In this document: piece after piece, positions 2,124 to 10,853 of the stretch
Layout of the letters: every line of letters starts with the position of its first letter
How positions within the stretch are numbered: position 1 is the first letter of the stretch
Sequence record: MK308675.1
DNA length: 64,000 nucleotides
Reading direction: 5' to 3' (one strand)
Position numbers and translations under genes: made by a program
The notes under the pieces: generated by a model
What the model saw: the letters and a program-made list of their open reading frames with translations, nothing else
Database searches by the model: none
Told to the model about the DNA's origin: nothing

Positions 2124-3548
2124 TTACAGTTGAGCAAGGTCGAATTCAGGAGCAGTCGACTTAGTCACGGTCATCTGTGTTCCGGCCCATTGCCCTAATA
2201 GACGAACCATCGCACGAACACCAGCTTGACTACGCGTTAGCGTCTCGTCATCTTCCATGAATGCATCCATGTCGTTCAGTAACTGCAAACAAGCAGAGTT
2301 AGGAACGATTGCTACACAAACAGCTTCACGGACATATTGGCCGATGTCAGCATTTGACTGTAGGGGATGTTTACCGAAGAAACCTTGCGCACGAGCAATA
2401 TAAGTCGGAACTTGGTCTTTCTCAACTTCGCTATGAATGTGGTTATAAAGGCCACGTTCGATTACACCTTTCATCTCTGCTACTGTCGCTAGTCGCTGAC
2501 GAGTACGCGCAGAACTTTCAATACGACGGTATTCCGCTGTATACTTAGAAGGGTCTTTCATTAGCGCTTCAGAAACACCAACAACAGTTTCACGACCAGA
2601 CGCAAGAGCTCCGATTAGTGCTTCAGCTTCACCTTCGCCATCCAACCACTTAGTGTAGTTCTTAGCGTAGACGAAAACTTCTTTGTTGTTAGAACCGTTA
2701 GGAATGATAAACTTACCAGACTTGTTGAACTCCGTTACGTGACGGATTTGGTCAGCTAGACGGTTGCCGAAGTAAGCACGTGCTTTTGCTAACTCTGTAC
2801 GTTCATGTACAGTGATGTCGTTTAGAGAGACGTTAGTGAACGAGTTGTTCAATAGCGCATCTAAGAACAGGAAGTTCAATAGATTGATTGGTGAGTTAAA
2901 CATAGCCGGAGAGTTAGACTCGGGCTGTTCATTGCGCAATAGGATTTCAGATGCAGTAGTGAAACCTAACAGGTTAGCACCTTCGCCCATTGCTTGCTTG
3001 ATACCGGTGTTCCAGACTTCGTTACCGCGCTTAAGTCCTTCGAAAAGAAGGTCGTCAGTTAGACCACCAAGAATCTTAGAGCGTAATGGGCCACTAAGTT
3101 CTACAGGACGGAATGCGCCAACACGATACTTTTCATACATCGTCGCTAGTTCAGGAGATGTGAAAGTAGGAAGAACGGCTACAGAACGGATACCGATGTT
3201 AAGAGGCGAATCGCCTTCAATTGCACGCTTAGCGTTTTCACAATCACCAACGATTGCCCTGACTAGCGGATTAACAACAGTACGTGCCATCTTCAGGTTA
3301 GCGGATGCACGGTTTGCCATAAGTTGAGCTACGCGACGCTTCTCACCGGTGTGAGGGTCAAAACCTACGTTGATAGGCATAGCTGCTTGGCGTACTTGGT
3401 CAACGACAGAATCGTTTTCCATGAATGCGTTTAGAGAAGAATGCACGAGGTCTAAGTGAGTGTTTTGGTTTAGGCTCAACGTGATGTTAGACGCTGCCAA
3501 ACTTGTACCTAGTTGCATCGCGGCTTCTAGTGACTTATCCTTGAACAT
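2124..3548 (-). CDS. virion (head) protein, phiKZ gp177-like
   Basis: 474-aa ORF with GGAG SD, syntenic downstream of vRNAP beta; SLE site near the N-terminus. Confidence 0.55.
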   Translation of the reverse strand: MFKDKSLEAAMQLGTSLAASNITLSLNQNTHLDLVHSSLNAFMENDSVVDQVRQAAMPINVGFDPHTGEKRRVAQLMANRASANLKMARTVVNPLVRAIVGDCENAKRAIEGDSPLNIGIRSVAVLPTFTSPELATMYEKYRVGAFRPVELSGPLRSKILGGLTDDLLFEGLKRGNEVWNTGIKQAMGEGANLLGFTTASEILLRNEQPESNSPAMFNSPINLLNFLFLDALLNNSFTNVSLNDITVHERTELAKARAYFGNRLADQIRHVTEFNKSGKFIIPNGSNNKEVFVYAKNYTKWLDGEGEAEALIGALASGRETVVGVSEALMKDPSKYTAEYRRIESSARTRQRLATVAEMKGVIERGLYNHIHSEVEKDQVPTYIARAQGFFGKHPLQSNADIGQYVREAVCVAIVPNSACLQLLNDMDAFMEDDETLTRSQAGVRAMVRLLGQWAGTQMTVTKSTAPEFDLAQL

Positions 3549-3711
3549 TTGCTTTCTCCGAGATTACGATATGTAGTTCTTGTGAGAAGATTGCTTCCAG
3601 CTCTTTCATGTCAGAGCCATTCAAATCGTTACCCGCAAGTTCTTGAATTGCGTCCGTACAGACATCAATCGCTGTAGCGGCTACAGCAACATTCTGAAGT
3701 GCAGTAGTCAT
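3535..3711 (-). CDS. small hypothetical protein, 58 aa (MTTALQNVAVAATAIDVCTDAIQELAG...)
   Basis: Not in the ORF track; ATG 3711 with GGAG SD, stop TAA 3535-3537 overlapping the start of the next gene. Confidence 0.55.
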   Translation of the reverse strand: MTTALQNVAVAATAIDVCTDAIQELAGNDLNGSDMKELEAIFSQELHIVISEKANVQG

Positions 3712-3815
3712 GTTTATACTCCAGGGTTAGAGCGCCGCTTGTTGCAGCGTTTATTGAAAAGTTTCGATGTGCCCTCTATATAAGGGCTCATCTTATTTGT
3801 CCTTTAAGGAGGGCA

Positions 3816-6356
3816 TTACCCCTCCGAAAAGTACATGTCTACCAACTGCTGGTTCTTCTTACGAACAACGGCGTTGATAACACCTTGTGAAATACATGAG
3901 GTTACGATACGGTTGTTTACAGATTGCGCACCGAAGACTAAGTCGATATCGCGACCATCTTCCGTTCTGTTAATGCCTTCCATGATACGACCGTGTACAG
4001 TTTTAAGCTGATTACTAACAACCGACTTATCGCCGATACCTGATTCGAGTTCGCTATCGATGTAGACCGAAATAACAACCTTACCAGGAATAACTTTCTC
4101 ACCAGCAACGTAAGTAGGCTTACGCAATTCGCCAGTACGGCCAGCAGCGCCGCGATTAAGGTCACGGCTTTCTTCTGCACGGCGAGCATTGTCCGCTTCA
4201 ACGATTGCTCGTAGGGATTCGCTCATGTCGTCTATGTTACCCATGTAGAAAACTTCGATGCGAGTTACAACGCCACCCGTTTTCGCTTTAGGTGTTTGGT
4301 TAGAAAGTTTGCTTAACGCAAGAAGCGAAGCGTCAGTCTGCTCAAGTCCGGTTAGAGTACCTTCCTTGATTGTGCCCAAGATAGTATCGAACTCTACTTC
4401 TTGACCAACCGTTACCAACCCTTCAATCTCTTGGTCGAAGTCCAGGATAATGCCTTTATTCTTAGAGATGCGAGTAGATAGTTTCTTACGGAAGTTCTCA
4501 GAGATAGCCGAACCATCTTCTAACGTATCGTTACCTTCTTTAAGTACAACTGTTGCCAGTGCACCAGAAAGCATAGACACGTTTTCAGGAGCAGTTAGTT
4601 CACGAGCAAAGAAACCGCTGTTCCATGCTAGAACCCAACCTTCTTCAAAAGTACTACCAACAACTTTATCGGTTACATATTCATGCGGAATGAGTTCACC
4701 TGCTACGCTACCGTGTTTAACACCTAAGCGATACCCTTCTTCACGGCCACTTGCGTATTTAACGCGAATGACTTTATCTGTAACCTTAGTTACTTCCCCA
4801 GCTTCTTTCGCACGGTAAACGAAGAACTCAGAAACGCGAGATGCGATAATTGAATCGTAACCAGAACGATAAGGCATTGGGTGAGAACCCGCAGTAGGAA
4901 CAACGGCTGATTGTTGTACCGCACCCAAGTTAGCACGTTTACCGTCATCGCGGTCCATGTCTGGGAACAGAAGTGCCGTAGTAGATAGCAGCGCTGAAGA
5001 ACCATCTTCAGGCGTCCAAGTGCCCGCAGTACCACGTAAGTCGTTGATGCGCGCGTTAGGTGTAGCGAAACCACGGATACCTACTTTCGCAGAGTCCGGA
5101 GTGTGCTCACTAAGGATACCTAAGTCGTTCTCGTGGAATACACGGTTACGTTTAACCAGTGTACGTGCCGAACGTCCGCCTTCACCTGCTAAGGTAATAG
5201 CTTCCTGTTCTTTAAGGTTGTGAACTGGGTTGACTTCACTTACTAGCTGAACAGAACTGTCCGCATTCAGACGGTTACGTAGTTCAGAAGGCATTAGCGT
5301 TATAGCTTCGTTGCGAGAGTTAGGCATACGACGCTGAGCAGCAATTGCTTCATACATCGCCAAGTAAAGAAGACCACTGATACGTTCCATGCCGCGAACG
5401 CGCATGAATTTAGGGTCAGCTTCATCGGGAGCATCGTCTGTCTTAATCAATTCACAACAGCGAATGAACAAGTCAACTAGGTTGTCAGGTTCTTTCATGT
5501 CAGCCAATACTTCTAACGTAATCGGGTCTAGGAACAAATCGTTCATTAGAGTCCAGTTATCAGCATGACCTTTGTTTGCTTTATAGTAAGGCAGTGACAC
5601 TACCCAACCATCGCGACGGTTAAAGTCGGACACGTTAAAGCGACGTGTCATTTCTTCCATGTCTTTTAGGCCAGACCAAATCAAAGATTGCATCGGGTCT
5701 TTAACGTCGACATAGAGACGTTCATCTGCAAACGAGATAACGATTTCATTCTGCAAGGCTTGAACTCGGCGGTCCAAAGGTTCCCAACGGTGACGCACTT
5801 TCAGTTTACGCAATAGCTTATCCAAGCCTAGCGTATAACCTAAGAACATAACCACAGGAATCTTGCGGTTCAATGAACGGAAGATAGCTACGTCAGATGG
5901 AGGAGTCCCCCAACCGCCGCCAGTAAGCTCTAGGATGGAACCACCTGCGCTCTTAGGAACGTTAACGGTGTTATCCATATTCATTGTGATGATGGCACCG
6001 TCGTAAGTACCACAGACAACAGCACCGCTGCGCTCAGCATTGGCAACTGCTTTCTCACCGTAACGCTGCTCACGCTTCTCATATTCGAAGTCGAACTTGT
6101 AAGCACCAGAATCAAAGCCACTGATTTCACTCATGAAAGAAGTGTAGTGACGTGGAAGTGGAACGTTCGGTATTTTGTTTGTACCATAGCGCAGACTAGT
6201 AACGCGGTCGTCGCCGTTGGTTAATGCAGCAGCAGAGAAAGCTTTACGTAACCAACGTCCTTGGTCATGTTTAGCTAGCTCGCTACGGCTAATGAAGACT
6301 TTACCTGCGTAAGAAGTTAGAGCAGCCTGGTTAGGCTTAGTCTTACGGATTGGCAT
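3816..6356 (-). CDS. rpoB: virion RNA polymerase beta subunit, exon 2 (phiKZ gp178-like)
   Basis: PIRK..AALTSYAGK, RANLGAVQQS and GDKSVVSNQLKT motifs of phiKZ-type beta; begins directly after the terminal G of the intron; spliced product 462+846=1308 aa. Confidence 0.9.
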   Translation of the reverse strand: MPIRKTKPNQAALTSYAGKVFISRSELAKHDQGRWLRKAFSAAALTNGDDRVTSLRYGTNKIPNVPLPRHYTSFMSEISGFDSGAYKFDFEYEKREQRYGEKAVANAERSGAVVCGTYDGAIITMNMDNTVNVPKSAGGSILELTGGGWGTPPSDVAIFRSLNRKIPVVMFLGYTLGLDKLLRKLKVRHRWEPLDRRVQALQNEIVISFADERLYVDVKDPMQSLIWSGLKDMEEMTRRFNVSDFNRRDGWVVSLPYYKANKGHADNWTLMNDLFLDPITLEVLADMKEPDNLVDLFIRCCELIKTDDAPDEADPKFMRVRGMERISGLLYLAMYEAIAAQRRMPNSRNEAITLMPSELRNRLNADSSVQLVSEVNPVHNLKEQEAITLAGEGGRSARTLVKRNRVFHENDLGILSEHTPDSAKVGIRGFATPNARINDLRGTAGTWTPEDGSSALLSTTALLFPDMDRDDGKRANLGAVQQSAVVPTAGSHPMPYRSGYDSIIASRVSEFFVYRAKEAGEVTKVTDKVIRVKYASGREEGYRLGVKHGSVAGELIPHEYVTDKVVGSTFEEGWVLAWNSGFFARELTAPENVSMLSGALATVVLKEGNDTLEDGSAISENFRKKLSTRISKNKGIILDFDQEIEGLVTVGQEVEFDTILGTIKEGTLTGLEQTDASLLALSKLSNQTPKAKTGGVVTRIEVFYMGNIDDMSESLRAIVEADNARRAEESRDLNRGAAGRTGELRKPTYVAGEKVIPGKVVISVYIDSELESGIGDKSVVSNQLKTVHGRIMEGINRTEDGRDIDLVFGAQSVNNRIVTSCISQGVINAVVRKKNQQLVDMYFSEG

Positions 6357-7847
6357 CTACTCTCCAACCACGGAGAGCAGGACTATATCATGTCTTTCAT
6401 AATCTGCGAGAGATTAATCAGACCCTACCGTTTCGGCTTGCGCCTACTCTACTCGGTTATTCCCAGTAACATCGCTGTTAAAGGTATCCTTTCGATAGTC
6501 TCTGAACTCATCCCGTATCTTTCGACTTAGGGACTTCGTTGCGTCGGTCACTTCCTCGGCTAGCGTTTTTACCGTGCTTCTCACTTCCATTACTGGGAGA
6601 AGTATTACAGTGCGTTTCTGCCTGTAAGTGGTAGCTAGGGAGTTATAGAAGATTCCCGCAGTTAGGTAGGTTTATAGTGGACATGTCTTGTAAAAAGACT
6701 TTGTATTAAAATGTTTACTAGGTAAGGAACATCACTAACTTACTCAGCAAAGAACTCATCAAGTATTTCATCGACGGTTCGCTTGTCGAAACAACTTATA
6801 GTTAATTGAGATAAACCCATTTCTTTAACCAAAGCTAGTTTCTCTTTATCCCGCTTAACAGTCCCTAGGTGGCCTTCTAAGCCGCCAAAGCGTTCTACGG
6901 GTACAAAGTGTTGTTTACCGTGAAACTCTATCATTAGAGCTTGTTCAGGGACGTAGAAGTCCCAACGGTATTTGTAATCTGGAAATGAGTATTCTGGGAT
7001 ATACTTCTTACCGTTTCTTTCCAACCAAAGCCTAACTTCTCTTTCACCGATGCTTTCTTTGCAGCGAGGACAGCCAGCTTTAGCTTGTATATGTTCAAGG
7101 GGCGTTTTAGTAAACTCGCCATGAATGGGACAGTTAAGAGTAATCTTAACTCTCATTCCTTTATAGTCTATGACGGAATAGTCAAAGGCATCGCCGTGTA
7201 TTTCTTTTGCTTCCCGAACAAAGTCTTCTTTAGGACGCATCATGGTTTCATCTGAACAGCGCTTACAGCCGTAACCCTCTAGGAAAGAACTCACTCTCTT
7301 AGTGAATGGGCCGTGGCTTTTGCATTCAAGCTCAATTACGTCATCGGTATTGCCAAACGTGACGTTGCTAAGGTCATACGTGTCGCCAAACAACTCTTTG
7401 GCTTTCTGTAGGAACGCTTCTGTACTTAAACGCGTTTCTGCCATGGCGCAAATAAAGCACTTGGTGTCGCGCATGTGTTCGGCGGGCCTAGGAAAGAACG
7501 GCCCGTGGTCAGGACAAATGACTTTGACCGGACAGGTAGAATTAATAAACTCTACTTCGCTGTAGTCGTACTTACCCTTATGAATTCTTTTACTTTCCTC
7601 TAGGAAATCGCTAACATGTAAAAGAGCACCAGAACAGTAAGGACAGCCTTTAGACCTAGGCCTGGTTAGGTTACCGGGAATAACATCCCAGTCGCCATGT
7701 TTCTTGCACGTAACTGTGCAAGGGGTCTTGTTGTTTATGTAAACAAGCTTTTCAAAAGTAAACGCGTCCCCATAACGCTCTTTTACTCTTCTTATGAAAG
7801 CTTGCTGTGGTGTGATGTTTTGTTTCATTTTAATACTTAGGATTTTA
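6357..7847 (-). mobile_element. group I intron in vRNAP beta gene (1491 nt)
   Basis: 5' exon ends GTGGAT then TAA; terminal G at 6357 then ATGCCAATCCGT; P AACTGCGGGAA (6653-6663), R GTTCAGAGACTA (6496-6507), S ATGATATAGTC (6381-6391); P3 CCTACC/GGTAGG; IGS GTCCAC (6677-6682) pairs with GTGGAT giving the U.G wobble. Confidence 0.92.
6740..7828 (-). CDS. intron-encoded endonuclease: 4 CxxHG...CxxC zinc-binding repeats plus C-terminal Vsr/DUF559-like PD-(D/E)xK domain
   Basis: Start moved to ATG 7828 (inside intron); repeats CKKHG..CPYC, CPDHG..CFIC, CKSHG..CKRC, CPIHG..CPRC; nuclease motif RWDFYVP..IEFHGKQH. Confidence 0.8.
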   Translation of the reverse strand: MKQNITPQQAFIRRVKERYGDAFTFEKLVYINNKTPCTVTCKKHGDWDVIPGNLTRPRSKGCPYCSGALLHVSDFLEESKRIHKGKYDYSEVEFINSTCPVKVICPDHGPFFPRPAEHMRDTKCFICAMAETRLSTEAFLQKAKELFGDTYDLSNVTFGNTDDVIELECKSHGPFTKRVSSFLEGYGCKRCSDETMMRPKEDFVREAKEIHGDAFDYSVIDYKGMRVKITLNCPIHGEFTKTPLEHIQAKAGCPRCKESIGEREVRLWLERNGKKYIPEYSFPDYKYRWDFYVPEQALMIEFHGKQHFVPVERFGGLEGHLGTVKRDKEKLALVKEMGLSQLTISCFDKRTVDEILDEFFAE

Positions 7848-9233
7848 ATCCACTTTCTGAGCATCCATGGTGTAGCGAACGCCACCCATGGTGAAAGTAC
7901 CATCTTCATGAAAGACAGGAACTTCGATTTCAAACGTAGCTTCTTTACCATCAACTGGAAGAAGAGTGATGCGAAGTAATTGAGTTTCTTCTAATGCATC
8001 CGCTACGATTTCAGATTGGTAATCGCGAAGAATGTAACCGCCTCGGTTAAGAGACAAGAACACGTTCGCAATATCTTTCTGCATTACATCAGAGACATAC
8101 TTGCTACGCATCTTAGCAATGGTAGATTTCCTGGCGTGCTCTGGAACAACGTTATCGCCGATAGGCACTTTAAGGTCGTCGTCGTAAGCGATGTCTTCCT
8201 TAGAGACTTGGGCGTATTGTTGTAGTGGTTGGTCTGAGAAAGGAGAATCGATTCGAGCAATGTTACCGATAGCTTCAGCATAGCGACGTTGCTGTGCTTG
8301 AGTTAGTTGACCTGCTTCAATCTTTTCTTCTAGTTGGCGTTGCAAACCTTCCGGAATAAGTTTACGAGCTTCACTCTCTGAGATAGTAACAGTTTCATTT
8401 TCCATCTCAGCTGCTTCTTCTTCATCAACCGTCAAGGTAAGCATTAGCTTTTCCAGTAGGTCGTGGAACTTAGCAGCAGCACGGTCATCGGTATCTGCGT
8501 GATAGAACAATGTTTCTACCGGCAGGAATACCGCTTTAGTGCCGACAGTAATAACGAAGACAACATCGTCTGCTTCAATCTTACCAACAATTGAATCCAC
8601 GCCGCTCATCGCACGATAGATTTCTAGAACCCATTGCATCGCAGGGTCACGGAAAGCATCACGGTATTGAGCTTGTACTTCTTCAAGGTTAGCTTTGAAT
8701 ACAGCTTCGGTTTGCCAAGTGTTGCCTAAGTGAATCTGAAGGAACTGAGGACGTGTACCGCTGAACAGGTTCATGTTAGCGACAACAGTCTCGGCCATGT
8801 TAGCCCAGTAGTCTTGATAAACCGTCGGAGTCTCACCGTAGCGCGCCATACGAGGTACAAGAGTGTAGTCTGCTACAATCATGTCCTTTTCATCCATAAG
8901 GTCACGCTGGACGTTACGGGTGCGTTTTACGGTAGGAGTGTTAGCGTAGTAGTCTTTAATGTAACGACCGCTAGAGAACTGAACACGACGAACACGGCCA
9001 TGCTTGAATACGCCTTCTTCAATGAAAGAGTGACGGATTCGGTTAGGCCAGTTAACTGCCAGCAGACTGTCAGCTTTAAAGCCTCGGTCTTCAGCTGAAA
9101 GGGCCGAATGGTGAAGGATAGGCTTCTTAGGTAAAGTAATACCAATGAGGTCTACGAGCGGTGCTTGAGATAAGGCAAGATTTTCTCTTGCCCCGTATTC
9201 TCGGATAAATGCGTTTAAATGTAATAAAGACAT
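7848..9233 (-). CDS. rpoB: virion RNA polymerase beta subunit, exon 1
   Basis: 462 codons ending GGVRYTMDAQKVD, joins in frame to MPIRK of exon 2. Confidence 0.85.
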
Positions 9234-9423: not shown

Positions 9424-10853
9424 CAGAATCTTCAACAGTATCGCTAATACTGCCCTGTTTATTAAACAGCTCCGGGTCTCCCCGAATGCTGAGACTATAT
9501 AATCACCCTCGTAAACTGTTACCGCTTATGAGGGGCTCCCCGTTTCCATTTAAGCCGTTAGGCACCCGCTTGGGCCGTACTCTACTCACTTCCCCTAAGC
9601 TATGTTGGGCTTAGGCTATCATCCCCTAAAGGCTTTCTCTTTAGGTTAAGCTTTCGATAGTCGTTGAACTCATCCCATATCTCTTAATAGACTTAGGGAC
9701 TTCGCTGCGTCGATTTTCTCTATTCTCAAGGTTTTCACTTTTTAAACCTGTCATTAACAGTTGTCACTTATCTGTGTTTCCACGATAAGGCAGTACTTGA
9801 GACTTTACAAGAACTTCCCGCAATTAGAGGAGTTTATTTTCTACACATTACTGCGTAGGCGGACTTATGTCCAATGGTGTAAAGGTATGGTCTCTGTAAG
9901 AGCCTTTAGAAACAACGCTTCTCTGTAGCGCAGCTATGCCATTTAAGTCAGGAAAAAGTTCTTTCCAAACATCGGATAAGCTACGGTAAAGAGTACGTGT
10001 TTTGTCTGGAGCAGTCACCCAATACGGGCGTATGTTACCGCGCATAGGGTTAGACCAGAGTTCTTCTTTGGACCAAGACTTAAAGACTACGGTCTCATCG
10101 CCTTTAATGCGCATGCTCCATCCGTTTAAAGGATAGTTAGACTTTTCTGTTAATCTACGCTTAATTGCGTTTTTGTCAGCAGAAAGAAATCTACGTATTT
10201 TAGACTCAGTAGGAAATTCTAAGACTTCCTTAGTTTCAACATTGTAAAGCTCAAAACCAGAACTAGCAGGACGCATATAAGCTTCCCTATTGCCGGCAGA
10301 CACATCATCCCATGGAGTTTCATCTGTCAGCAGCTTTGCAAGCCATCCTCTTCCTAGAATGCCATTAGCTAAAAATTTAACTCGATGGCTATCGGAAAGA
10401 TTGCGTTCTTTTAAAAACTTGTTGAAATTAGAATAGATGACCTGGTTACCGCTAGGGTCCCGAATAATAACATCGCCCCATCCGTCCTGCCTAAGAAGAG
10501 TATCCCAAGCATGCTGTAGGTTGGATGTCTGCGTTGCCCATTCTAAGTTGTCTAAATCGTAGTTGGTTTTATCGCCGTCCTTATGGTTGACGATGTGTTC
10601 CTCACTAGGCTTATCAGGACCATAGAGTTCCATGAGCGCCACGTGAAGTCTAACGTTCTTGCCGTAATAGGCAAGCTTAAAGTAAATGTAGTCATCTGAA
10701 CCTTTCCAAGGCTTTAGATAAGTTTTGGAGATTTCACTGTAACATTTACCATCTCTTTCAAAAAGGTAACCTTTTAAATTTCTGTAGACTTTCATACTAA
10801 TCTCCTTGTATAAGATTAGTCGAAGTCACATCCCATTGGAGGACATATTGTTA
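9424..10853 (-). mobile_element. group I intron in vRNAP beta' gene (1430 nt)
   Basis: GCGGAT|TAA 5' junction, CTG|TTTGAT 3' junction; P AATTGCGGGAA (9815-9825), R GTTCAACGACTA (9658-9669), S ATTATATAGTC (9493-9503); IGS GTCC at 10841-10844. Confidence 0.93.
9848..10795 (-). CDS. intron-encoded HNH homing endonuclease (I-HmuI-like HNH with C-terminal NUMOD1-like repeats)
   Basis: HVALMELY...VNHKDGDKTNYDLDNLEWATQTSNLQHA; AAGGAG SD. Confidence 0.9.
   Translation of the reverse strand: MKVYRNLKGYLFERDGKCYSEISKTYLKPWKGSDDYIYFKLAYYGKNVRLHVALMELYGPDKPSEEHIVNHKDGDKTNYDLDNLEWATQTSNLQHAWDTLLRQDGWGDVIIRDPSGNQVIYSNFNKFLKERNLSDSHRVKFLANGILGRGWLAKLLTDETPWDDVSAGNREAYMRPASSGFELYNVETKEVLEFPTESKIRRFLSADKNAIKRRLTEKSNYPLNGWSMRIKGDETVVFKSWSKEELWSNPMRGNIRPYWVTAPDKTRTLYRSLSDVWKELFPDLNGIAALQRSVVSKGSYRDHTFTPLDISPPTQ

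What the first reader, a model, noticed from the sequence alone, without database searches (positions are those of the whole stretch)
6357..7847. Group I intron in vRNAP beta whose endonuclease gene sits inside the P1 loop, so the 5' splice site pairs with a guide 1.17 kb away
Seen: no U.G-forming guide near the 5' junction, but GTCCAC at 6677-6682 (after the endonuclease stop) pairs with exon GTGGAT over 6 bp with the U.G wobble, and the adjacent CAT can form P10 with exon-2 ATG. Splicing gives QKVD-MPIRK, restoring an uninterrupted beta. Established: well-studied phage intron ORFs are mostly in L6, L8 or L9; L1 insertion is known from the Physarum I-PpoI intron. Inference: splicing cannot start until the whole endonuclease ORF has been transcribed.
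Basis: partly seen in the sequence, partly recalled or inferred. Interest (0 to 1): 0.7.

Follow-up and report, generated by a model that had tools for sequence, protein, structure and literature searches.

The report
Phage intron with endonuclease in P1
A jumbo Vibrio phage's virion RNA polymerase beta gene is interrupted by an unannotated, probably self-splicing group I intron whose homing-endonuclease gene lies between the 5' splice site and its guide sequence, a layout I found in about eight RNA polymerase introns of related phages.

Summary

- **Source.** The window is Vibrio phage vB_VmeM-Yong. The gene is on the minus strand.
- **Anatomy.** Exon 1 ends at 7848 (QKVD) and exon 2 starts at 6356 (MPIRK). 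Between them lie 1,491 nt: a 19-nt leader, a 362-aa endonuclease ORF (7828-6740), then the whole ribozyme (IGS, P3-P9).
- **Junction.** Three intron-less relatives read straight through it; phage sm033 reads QKVDMPIRK.
- **Ribozyme.** Rfam's group I model hits 6720-6360 at 43.3 bits. That is below the gathering score of 50, with E = 1e-7 for the window.
- **Guide.** GUCCAC (6682-6677) alone is not significant. It does sit 19 nt 5' of the P4 motif. Seven ORF-less relatives pair a guide at that offset with a nearby exon.
- **Covariation.** Six ORF-first introns at four sites show compensatory P1 changes: 36/36 cells paired, 3 of 6 pairs changed on both sides.
- **Recent gain or loss.** Phages pir03 (intron+) and C-ZP2022 (intron-) are near-identical except at -1, +3 and +6.

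The endonuclease is Vsr/I-Bth0305I-like. P10 is weak. The "cannot start until the ORF is transcribed" inference is true but trivial. Splicing itself is untested. This is a new member of a known kind.

The parts
7848..9233 (-). Exon 1 of the vRNAP beta gene (462 codons, ends ...DAQKVD). Its last 6-7 nt, (A)GUGGAU at 7854/7853-7848, form the 5' strand of P1.
   Evidence: ORF list. tblastn to RNAP beta genes of jumbo phages. The match ends on the base before the exon-2 match in sm033, BONAISHI and C-ZP2022.
6357..7847 (-). Group I intron, 1,491 nt. It starts with UAA in frame with exon 1 and ends with the terminal G at 6357.
7829..7847 (-). 19-nt leader between the 5' splice site and the endonuclease start codon (UAAAAUCCUAAGUAUUAAA). 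It has no clear Shine-Dalgarno sequence.
   Evidence: Sequence. The first 5 nt, UAAAA, are shared with pir03 and L007.
6740..7828 (-). Homing-endonuclease ORF, 362 aa plus stop, lying in L1. It has four zinc-finger repeat modules and a C-terminal Vsr/I-Bth0305I-like nuclease domain.
   Evidence: Pfam DUF723, CapR, DUF4379. PHROG endonuclease families, best 2e-63. 43% identical to the pir03 ORF and 35% to the L007 ORF, with conserved E/D/E-x-H residues. AlphaFold model pLDDT 83.9. Foldseek hits 1vsr, 1cw0_A and 3r3p_B with target-normalised TM-score 0.57-0.61.
6704..6714 (-). CAUUUUAAUAC. It is perfectly complementary over 11 bp to GUAUUAAAAUG at 7836-7826, which includes the ORF start codon. 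This is a possible helix that closes the L1 loop and masks the start codon. Tentative.
   Evidence: RNAduplex -11.2 kcal/mol; 3.2% of dinucleotide shuffles do as well. The same test is not significant in pir03 or L007.
6685..6699 (-). Small hairpin GUCUU-UUUAC-AAGAC, just 5' of the guide.
   Evidence: Read from sequence. Hairpins with different sequences sit at the same place in pir03 (AUGCU/GGCAU) and L007 (CCAU/AUGG). No statistical test was run.
6677..6682 (-). Internal guide sequence GUCCAC, the 3' strand of P1. G6682 pairs with U7848.
6665..6670 (-). P3 5' strand CCUACC, which pairs with GGUAGG at 6429-6424. There is no P2; the guide and P3 are joined by UAUAAA.
   Evidence: L007 has CCCCCC/GGGGGG, two compensatory pairs.
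6540..6660 (-). P4 (UGCGGG 6660-6655 with CCgaCGCA 6547-6540), enclosing P5 and a branched P5 extension.
   Evidence: Rfam alignment. RNAalifold shows many compensatory pairs in the P5 extension. Coordinates.
6506..6539 (-). P6/P6a/P6b.
   Evidence: Rfam alignment, RNAalifold, coordinates.
6496..6500 (-). P7 5' strand GACUA, which pairs with UAGUC at 6385-6381 (a pseudoknot with P3).
   Evidence: L007 has GGCCA/UGGUC.
6430..6495 (-). 66-nt insert between P7 and the 3' strand of P3, including the hairpin GGC-GCAA-GCC at 6444-6435. This looks like the P7.1/P7.2 region of subgroup IA.
   Evidence: The subgroup was not formally assigned.
6392..6423 (-). P8.
   Evidence: RNAalifold, coordinates.
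6357..6380 (-). P9 hairpin (CUCUCC 6377-6372 with GGAGAG 6365-6360) followed by UAG. The Shine-Dalgarno-like GGAGAG upstream of the exon-2 AUG lies inside this stem.
   Evidence: P9 is kept as a hairpin with unrelated sequence in pir03 and L007.
3816..6356 (-). Exon 2 of vRNAP beta (846 codons, starts MPIRK). The Met is native: intron-less sm033 has it too.

Best explanation
Window 7847-6357 (minus strand) is a mobile group I intron, IA-like and without P2. It sits in the gene for the PhiKZ gp178-type virion RNA polymerase beta subunit of Vibrio phage vB_VmeM-Yong.

Its layout is ORF-first. A 19-nt leader follows the 5' splice site. Next comes a 362-aa Vsr/I-Bth0305I-like homing-endonuclease gene. 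The guide sequence and all of P3-P9 occupy the last 326 nt. P1 therefore forms between exon (A)GUGGAU and GUCCAC(U) about 1,165 nt downstream, and the endonuclease gene is the P1 loop.

Inferred from the standard group I pathway: an external guanosine attacks after U7848 of the U.G pair. The terminal G (6357) then enters the G site, and the exons are joined to give ...QKVD-MPIRK..., one 1,308-aa beta subunit.

Also inferred: the endonuclease cuts intron-less alleles near this site, and repair copies the intron in with a few flanking bases.

Shown here: the anatomy, the exact junction, conservation and covariation of the ribozyme and of P1, and a near-isogenic intron+/intron- pair.

Not shown: splicing, endonuclease activity, and how the ORF is translated.
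For: - **Exact junction.** The exon-1 and exon-2 tblastn matches abut in sm033 (148840/148841), BONAISHI (27292/27293) and C-ZP2022 (234897/234896). The sm033 DNA reads QKVDMPIRK.
- **Ribozyme.** RF00028 scores 43.3 bits at 6720-6360. A second intron in the window scores 69.9 bits. RNAalifold on Yong, pir03 and L007 gives 66 pairs, 26 with compensatory changes. P3, P7 and P9 covary.
- **Same site, three phages.** Introns at this site with the same endonuclease family occur in phages whose beta proteins are only about 30-40% identical: pir03 and IMG/VR contig L007. In L007 the exon is GCGGAU and the guide GUCCGC, a compensatory change.
- **P1 across six ORF-first introns.** Exon/guide pairs are GUGGAU/GUCCAC (twice), GCGGAU/GUCCGC (twice), UUCGAU/GUCGAA and GACGAU/GUCGUC. 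All 36 cells pair, and no shuffle of 500 does as well.
- **Guide position.** Five of the six have the guide 19-20 nt 5' of the P4 motif. Seven ORF-less relatives have a guide at offset 19 with a local P1.
- **Recent gain or loss.** pir03 and C-ZP2022 flanks differ at -1, +3, +6 and only one other base in 600.
- **Endonuclease fold.**; HHpred to 3R3P for the pir03 homologue in PMC7765460.
Against: - The Rfam score is below the family's gathering threshold.
- No RNA or protein data show splicing.
- The hexamer alone is not significant.
- L007 has a better 8-bp match to its exon inside its ORF (intron position 553). So complementarity alone does not pick out the guide.
- For the P1 count I chose the guide hexamers by complementarity, though at a fixed offset in five of six introns.
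- Without splicing, both halves could be made as separate proteins. Exon 1 ends in a stop, and exon 2 starts with AUG preceded by GGAGAG.
- P10 is weak.
Confidence: 0.85

Rival explanations
1. Split gene with a dead intron. The insert no longer splices, and beta is made as two polypeptides: 462 aa ending at the UAA at 7847-7845, and 846 aa starting at AUG 6356. They assemble as separate subunits, as jumbo-phage RNAP subunits often do.
For: A stop codon follows the 5' splice site directly. AUG is the first exon-2 codon and has GGAGAG 4-9 nt upstream. GenBank annotates two separate CDSs. The PhiPA3 record's note likens its gp209 and gp211 to 201phi2-1 'gp273/274'.
Against: The Met is native, since it is present in intron-less sm033. 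pir03 has GUG and L007 has CUU at that position, so a start codon there is not general. GGAGAG is buried in the P9 stem. The ribozyme helices and P1 keep pairing through compensatory changes, which implies selection for splicing. An in-frame stop just inside the intron is usual for bacterial and phage group I introns (PMC3073962).
Confidence: 0.07
2. The intron splices, but P1 uses another guide. Candidates are the G.U-rich GUUUACUUUU at intron +85 and a local hairpin (GGAU/AUCC around the splice site). GUCCAC would then be coincidental and the ORF would not be in L1.
For: A 10-bp pairing with 4 G.U exists at intron +85, and weaker matches lie at comparable ORF positions in pir03. GGAUUAAAAUCC can form a 4-bp hairpin.
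Against: The +85 match lies in the conserved protein motif FTFEK, so it is explained by coding. The local hairpin would place U-A, not U.G, at the splice site, and it is absent in pir03 and L007 (UAAAACUC). Only the hexamer at offset 19 is found in all introns and covaries with the exon.
Confidence: 0.05
3. Two elements side by side. A free-standing endonuclease gene lies between exon 1 and an ORF-less intron, and the RNA is joined in some other way.
For: Of the 12 IMG/VR loci with relatives of this endonuclease that were scanned, 11 have no intron core next to them. The family is therefore mostly free-standing.
Against: Beta coding sequence stops before the ORF and resumes only after the ribozyme. 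The only exon-complementary guide at the canonical position pairs with the exon end upstream of the ORF. The ORF is therefore inside the intron by definition. The free-standing relatives fit an origin by capture, not the present state.
Confidence: 0.02

Closest known systems
PhiPA3 gp210 intron in the vRNAP beta gene gp211/gp209 (Birkholz et al. 2024, PMC11620839)
   Same: Same host gene: both are homologues of PhiKZ gp178. It is a group I core (67.8 bits) preceded by its endonuclease ORF, so the layout is also ORF-first. Exon 2 also begins with AUG at the 3' splice site.
   Different: The site differs. PhiPA3's is after DD (gp178 D1072), and Yong is uninterrupted there (DRDDGKRANLG in exon 2). 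The endonuclease is HNH/I-HmuI-like, not Vsr/I-Bth0305I-like. PhiPA3 has a P2. I could not find a guide matching its exon. Its competitive role was shown by experiment; nothing is shown for Yong.
Physarum PpLSU3 intron with I-PpoI, and other nuclear rDNA group I introns with HEGs in P1
   Same: The endonuclease gene lies in the P1 segment. PMC9223047 lists P1, P2, P6, P8 and P9 as HEG sites in nuclear introns.
   Different: Those are nuclear rDNA introns of subgroups IC1/IE with His-Cys box enzymes. That the PpLSU3/I-PpoI intron itself carries its HEG in P1 is from my memory; the cited paper does not say which introns do. This one is a phage mRNA intron, IA-like, with a PD-(D/E)xK-type enzyme.
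I-Bth0305I (PDB 3R3P), a phage intron endonuclease of the EDxHD family, and E. coli Vsr
   Same: The predicted C-terminal domain matches 1vsr, 1cw0_A and 3r3p_B, with target-normalised TM-score 0.57-0.61 and Foldseek probability 1.00. PMC7765460 reports HHpred 97.5% to 3R3P_A for the pir03 homologue.
   Different: No sequence-level PDB match. Foldseek E-values are modest (2e-3 to 1e-2). The N-terminal part consists of four DUF723/CapR-type zinc-finger repeats. That I-Bth0305I defines an 'EDxHD' family is from my memory.
T4 td intron with I-TevI, and ORF-containing relatives of this intron in IMG/VR
   Same: Phage IA-type cores with a mobile endonuclease. An in-frame stop lies just inside the intron (PMC3073962).
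   Different: I-TevI sits in the P6 loop (PMC3073962). Among 97 related cores in IMG/VR, 10 have an ORF between P4 and P7 and 1 has one between the two P7 strands. None was confirmed as ORF-first.

Membership tests
Group I intron (Rfam RF00028) | Conserved core P3-P9 scoring above the family threshold | tested here: inconclusive
   43.3 bits against a gathering score of 50; E 2.9e-9 for 1.8 kb and 1e-7 for the whole window. Related introns score 40-78 bits.
Group I intron (Rfam RF00028) | Core helices kept by compensatory changes, including the P3/P7 pseudoknot | tested here: met
   RNAalifold gives 66 pairs, 26 compensatory. P3 is CCUACC/GGUAGG here and CCCCCC/GGGGGG in L007. P7 is GACUA/UAGUC here and GGCCA/UGGUC in L007.
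Group I intron (Rfam RF00028) | P1 between the exon end and an internal guide, with U.G at the 5' splice site | tested here: met
   GUGGAU/GUCCAC. Across six introns 36/36 cells pair, 3 of 6 pairs are compensatory, and U.G is invariant.
Group I intron (Rfam RF00028) | Terminal G, and a junction that restores the host reading frame | tested here: met
   ...GAGUAG|AUG. The exon matches are contiguous in three intron-less phages.
Group I intron (Rfam RF00028) | Self-splicing with guanosine | not testable with these tools
   No RNA data are available.
Subgroup IA | Extra pairings (P7.1/P7.2) between P7 and the 3' strand of P3 | tested here: inconclusive
   A 66-nt insert with a GCAA-capped hairpin lies there. 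No subgroup models were available.
Group I introns with the HEG in P1 (L1) | The whole ORF lies between the 5' splice site and the guide sequence | tested here: met
   The ORF spans intron positions 20-1108 and the guide 1166-1171. No conserved local guide exists.
Vsr / I-Bth0305I-like (EDxHD) homing endonucleases | Vsr-like PD-(D/E)xK nuclease fold | tested here: met
   Foldseek hits 1vsr, 1cw0_A and 3r3p_B, target-normalised TM-score 0.57-0.61, probability 1.00, E 2e-3 to 1e-2, on a model with pLDDT 83.9.
Vsr / I-Bth0305I-like (EDxHD) homing endonucleases | Family catalytic motif residues, and site-specific cleavage | not tested
   E262, D290, E301, H303 and H307 are invariant among the three intron ORFs. 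I did not map them onto the 3R3P active site, and there is no assay.
PhiPA3 gp210-type intron | Same insertion site and an HNH endonuclease | tested here: not met
   The site differs, and this ORF has no HNH domain. The window's second intron does carry an HNH_3 ORF.

The most novel reading that the evidence does not exclude
The ORF-first (L1) layout may be a lineage-wide trait of RNA polymerase introns in PhiKZ-like, probably nucleus-forming, jumbo phages. I found about eight such introns at about four sites, carrying two unrelated endonuclease families.

The layout may be tolerated or favoured because these phages transcribe inside a phage nucleus, away from ribosomes. Ribosomes then cannot interfere with a P1 helix that spans more than 1 kb. 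The excised intron could itself serve as the endonuclease mRNA: a short leader, then the ORF, then the folded ribozyme as a 3' end.

A leader/post-ORF helix might also mask the start codon until the RNA is processed.
Probability: 0.15. Interest if true: 0.7.

Novelty: new member of a known kind. Interest (0 to 1): 0.4.

Why it matters
1. **Annotation.** The four Yong records and pir03 annotate the beta subunit as two proteins. In Yong XC31 the endonuclease is truncated and a spurious 48-aa CDS lies inside the ribozyme. The pir03 paper does not mention introns.
2. **More mobile introns in vRNAP genes.** The published example is PhiPA3's, where the endonuclease acts as a weapon between co-infecting phages. 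Here there are further sites, including one inside the beta' NADFDGD catalytic motif, and a second endonuclease family.
3. **An experimental system.** pir03 (intron+) and C-ZP2022 (intron-) are near-identical around the site. They are a natural pair for testing homing and competition.
4. **RNA folding.** A set of natural introns with P1 loops over 1 kb, alongside ORF-less relatives with local P1 at the same guide position, is a clean comparison. It could show how long-range P1 formation is achieved.

Tried and rejected
- **Local P1 hairpin** (GGAU/AUCC at the splice site). It gives U-A, not U.G, and is not conserved in pir03 or L007. Rejected.
- **Alternative guides inside the ORF** (+85 and others). 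They are G.U-rich, explained by coding, and not conserved in position. Rejected as the guide.
- **Helix closing the L1 loop and masking the start codon.** It is 11 bp and perfect in Yong. Only 3.2% of shuffles match it here and 6% in the second Yong intron, but it is not significant in pir03, L007, or C-ZP2022's two introns. Kept only as tentative.
- **P10.** 3 bp here, 5 bp with a bulge in pir03, about 1 bp in L007. Not persuasive.
- **Guide of the PhiPA3 intron.** Not found. The hexamer before its P2 (GUCCCA) does not match its exon GAUGAU.
- **Endonuclease relatives in IMG/VR.** 24 loci were found. Of the 12 scanned with Rfam, only L007 had an intron core.
- **Survey of 97 related cores for other ORF-first cases.** Ten candidate upstream ORFs showed no endonuclease domain; one is a capsid protein. 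They are probably host exons.
- **PDB sequence search with the endonuclease.** No hit.
- **First structure job.** It was redone with the window and IMG/VR sequences.
- **MAFFT alignment of six cores**. It was poor in the variable arms, so I used the three orthologous introns for RNAalifold.
Full report
[quoted passage not shown] These are jumbo phages of about 290 kb, and their records annotate this region only as hypothetical proteins. The gene is on the minus strand. An ORF at 9233-7848 ends ...DAQKVD and is followed at once by UAA. An ORF at 6356-3816 begins MPIRK. The 1,491 nt between them hold a 362-aa ORF (7828-6740). That ORF is in a different frame from exon 1 and starts 19 nt after the exon end.

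**Is it an intron, and is the junction right?** I searched the last 251 aa of the upstream ORF and the first 250 aa of the downstream ORF separately against phage genomes. In three relatives the two matches fall on adjacent bases of one gene:
- vB_VpaM_sm033: 148840/148841
- BONAISHI: 27292/27293
- C-ZP2022: 234897/234896

The sm033 DNA reads CAGAAAGTTGAT ATGCCTATTCGTAAG, which is QKVD MPIRK.

Exon 2 also matches PhiPA3 gp211. Birkholz et al. (PMC11620839) describe gp211/209 as a vRNAP subunit homologous to PhiKZ gp178. 'vRNAP beta' is thus supported by homology and by the annotations of the best hits. I did not run a reciprocal test against the non-virion polymerase.

**The ribozyme.** At its gathering threshold Rfam finds one group I intron in the window, at 9876-9470(-), scoring 69.9 bits. 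With E-value reporting it also finds 6720-6360(-) at 43.3 bits. That is below the gathering score of 50, with E 2.9e-9 in the 1.8-kb search and 1e-7 for the whole window. The whole core therefore lies 3' of the ORF.

From the sequence I read these helices (coordinates):

| Element | Sequence and position |
|---|---|
| P3 | CCUACC 6670-6665 with GGUAGG 6429-6424 |
| P4 | UGCGGG 6660-6655 with CCgaCGCA 6547-6540 |
| P5 | with a branched extension, inside P4 |
| P6 | 6539-6506 |
| P7 | GACUA 6500-6496 with UAGUC 6385-6381 |
| P7-to-P3' insert | 66 nt, with a GCAA-capped hairpin (IA-like) |
| P8 | 6423-6392 |
| P9 | CUCUCC 6377-6372 with GGAGAG 6365-6360 |
| 3' end | UAG, terminal G at 6357 |

There is no P2. 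Absence of P2 is known in some group I introns (PMC3984707).

**Relatives at the same site.** Two other phages carry an intron at exactly this position with the same kind of ORF.
- **vB_pir03.** Its intron is 1,550 nt with a 362-aa ORF 43% identical to Yong's and a core scoring 45.4 bits.
- **IMG/VR contig L007** (220 kb). Its exon 1 ends ...RAD and exon 2 starts LPIRK. It has an ORF about 372 aa long, 35% identical, and a core scoring 44.4 bits.

RNAalifold on the three cores predicts 66 pairs, and 26 keep pairing through changes on both sides. P3, P7 and P9 also covary. This is the pattern of a ribozyme under selection, not a relic.

**Where is the guide?** GUCCAC at 6682-6677 pairs with exon GUGGAU: six pairs with U.G at the splice site, seven with the next A-U. 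Taken alone this is weak. The hexamer is expected about 0.36 times in the intron, and G.U-rich matches to the exon occur inside the ORF. Three observations make it convincing.

First, its position is fixed. It starts 19 nt 5' of the P4 motif AAYUGCGGG in Yong, pir03 and L007. It starts 19-20 nt 5' in two further ORF-first introns of C-ZP2022.

Second, ORF-less relatives use that same position in the ordinary way. I scanned IMG/VR for the conserved P7 motif and obtained 97 related cores. In seven of them the hexamer at offset 19 pairs with a sequence 8-37 nt upstream, forming a normal local P1.

Third, the pairing covaries with the exon:

| Intron (site) | Exon end | Guide |
|---|---|---|
| Yong, pir03 (beta, KVD\|) | GUGGAU | GUCCAC |
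| L007 (same site) | GCGGAU | GUCCGC |
| Yong second intron (beta' NAD\|FDGD) | GCGGAU | GUCCGC |
| C-ZP2022 (beta' NADFD\|GD) | UUCGAU | GUCGAA |
| C-ZP2022 (beta HDD\|) | GACGAU | GUCGUC |

A formal count gives 36 of 36 cells paired and 3 of 6 pairs changed on both sides. No shuffle of 500 does as well, and only 31-47% of cells pair when the partner strand is slid. One caveat applies: I chose the hexamers by complementarity, though at a fixed offset in five of the six.

No conserved guide lies near the 5' splice site. The GGAU/AUCC hairpin in Yong would put U-A at the splice site, and it is missing in pir03 and L007.

**Smaller points.**
- P10 (CAU with exon-2 AUG) is only 3 bp. pir03 can form 5 bp with a one-base bulge, and L007 essentially none. 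I call it unproven.
- The leader GUAUUAAAAUG (7836-7826, including the ORF start codon) is perfectly complementary to CAUUUUAAUAC (6714-6704). This could close the loop and mask the start codon. However, 3.2% of shuffles do as well, and the same test is not significant in pir03 or L007. It is a lead only.
- The timing inference, that splicing cannot start before the ORF is transcribed, is correct. It applies to any ORF-containing group I intron, because core strands and the terminal G always lie 3' of the ORF.

**The endonuclease.** Pfam finds DUF723, CapR and DUF4379 zinc-finger-type repeats. PHROGs places the protein in endonuclease families, the best at 2e-63. The ORF has four repeats of a C..HG.F...GC..C module and a conserved C-terminal domain. 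A six-sequence AlphaFold model (pLDDT 83.9) matches E. coli Vsr (1vsr, 1cw0_A) and the I-Bth0305I catalytic domain (3r3p_B), with target-normalised TM-scores of 0.57-0.61. This agrees with the HHpred hit reported for the pir03 ORF in PMC7765460. Most relatives in IMG/VR have no intron core beside them. That fits capture of a free-standing gene by the intron, which is an inference.

**Evidence of recent mobility.** pir03 (intron+) and C-ZP2022 (intron-) are identical over 300 nt upstream except at -1 (T against C). Over 300 nt downstream they differ only at +3, +6 and +133. The three junction-proximal differences are all synonymous. The -1 T supplies the U of the U.G pair, and +3 G improves pir03's P10. 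This looks like co-conversion during homing, or selection on the splice-site helices.

**Comparison with what is known.** Group I introns with homing endonucleases in this very gene are known from PhiPA3 (PMC11620839), at a different site and with an HNH enzyme. Its ORF also precedes the whole core. HEGs in P1 are documented for nuclear rDNA introns (PMC9223047). In T4 td the ORF is in the P6 loop (PMC3073962). A recent survey of Bastillevirinae introns noted ten cases with a ribozyme signature on only one side of the nuclease loop (PMC11878797). In my sample of 97 related cores, ORFs lay between P4 and P7 in ten and between the P7 strands in one. None was confirmed as ORF-first.

The layout is thus unusual among phage introns, but it is not a new kind of element. 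It recurs in the RNA polymerase introns of these jumbo phages with two unrelated endonuclease families. One could speculate that this relates to transcription inside a phage nucleus. BONAISHI, a relative, encodes chimallin (PMC10587174). I did not test this for Yong.

**Verdict.** Splicing and cleavage remain untested. Novelty: a new, unannotated member of a known kind. Interest: moderate.

Noticed in passing
window 9424-10853 (minus strand): A second ORF-first group I intron (Rfam 69.9 bits at 9876-9470) splits the beta' N-terminal subunit gene inside the catalytic NADFDGD motif (...LGAD|FDGD...). It carries a 315-aa HNH_3 endonuclease ORF (10795-9848) whose 3' end overlaps the guide GUCCGC (9863-9858). 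Unlike the first intron, it has a P2. GenBank annotates exon 2 as a 61-aa protein starting at a TTG inside the intron.
   Followed up: yes
window 6444-6590 and 6740-7444 (minus strand): Annotation problems in MK308674. A 48-aa CDS lies wholly inside the ribozyme (P5-P7 region). The endonuclease CDS is truncated to its last 234 codons. No intron is annotated, and beta appears as two proteins.
   Followed up: partly
L002 (pir03) 2888-4437 and L003 (C-ZP2022) 3000/3001: Two near-identical phages differ by the presence of this intron. The flanks differ only at -1, +3 and +6, all synonymous, plus one base at +133.
   Followed up: yes
L003 (C-ZP2022) 48-1441 and 4435-5873: C-ZP2022 has two more ORF-first introns. 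One is in beta' (NADFD|GD, 6 nt from the Yong site). The other is in beta after HDD, which is the PhiPA3 gp210 site. Their guides are GUCGAA and GUCGUC, 19-20 nt before P4.
   Followed up: partly
L005 (PhiPA3) 3169-4520 (minus strand): In the published PhiPA3 gp210 intron the ORF also precedes the whole core. The hexamer just before its P2 (GUCCCA) pairs with only 3 nt of its exon end (GAUGAU), and I found no better guide near the core. Exon -12..-1 is complementary over 12 bp (4 G.U) to intron +2..+13, which cannot form a hairpin as placed. Unexplained.
   Followed up: partly
L007 5416-5790: The same IMG/VR jumbo contig has an ORF-less group I intron (78.2 bits) a few codons past the DD site of beta (DDAKR...). 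It appears to have a local P1 and a P2 hairpin.
   Followed up: partly
L007 intron position 553 (inside the endonuclease ORF): GUCCGCAC matches the L007 exon end over 8 bp (1 G.U), better than the canonical guide does. It may be chance or a decoy.
   Followed up: no
window 6685-6699; L002 about 4036-4052; L007 about 3606-3621: A small hairpin lies directly 5' of the guide in all three introns at this site, with unrelated stem sequences (GUCUU/AAGAC, AUGCU/GGCAU, CCAU/AUGG). Its role is unknown, and its 3' strand overlaps the P10 bases.
   Followed up: no
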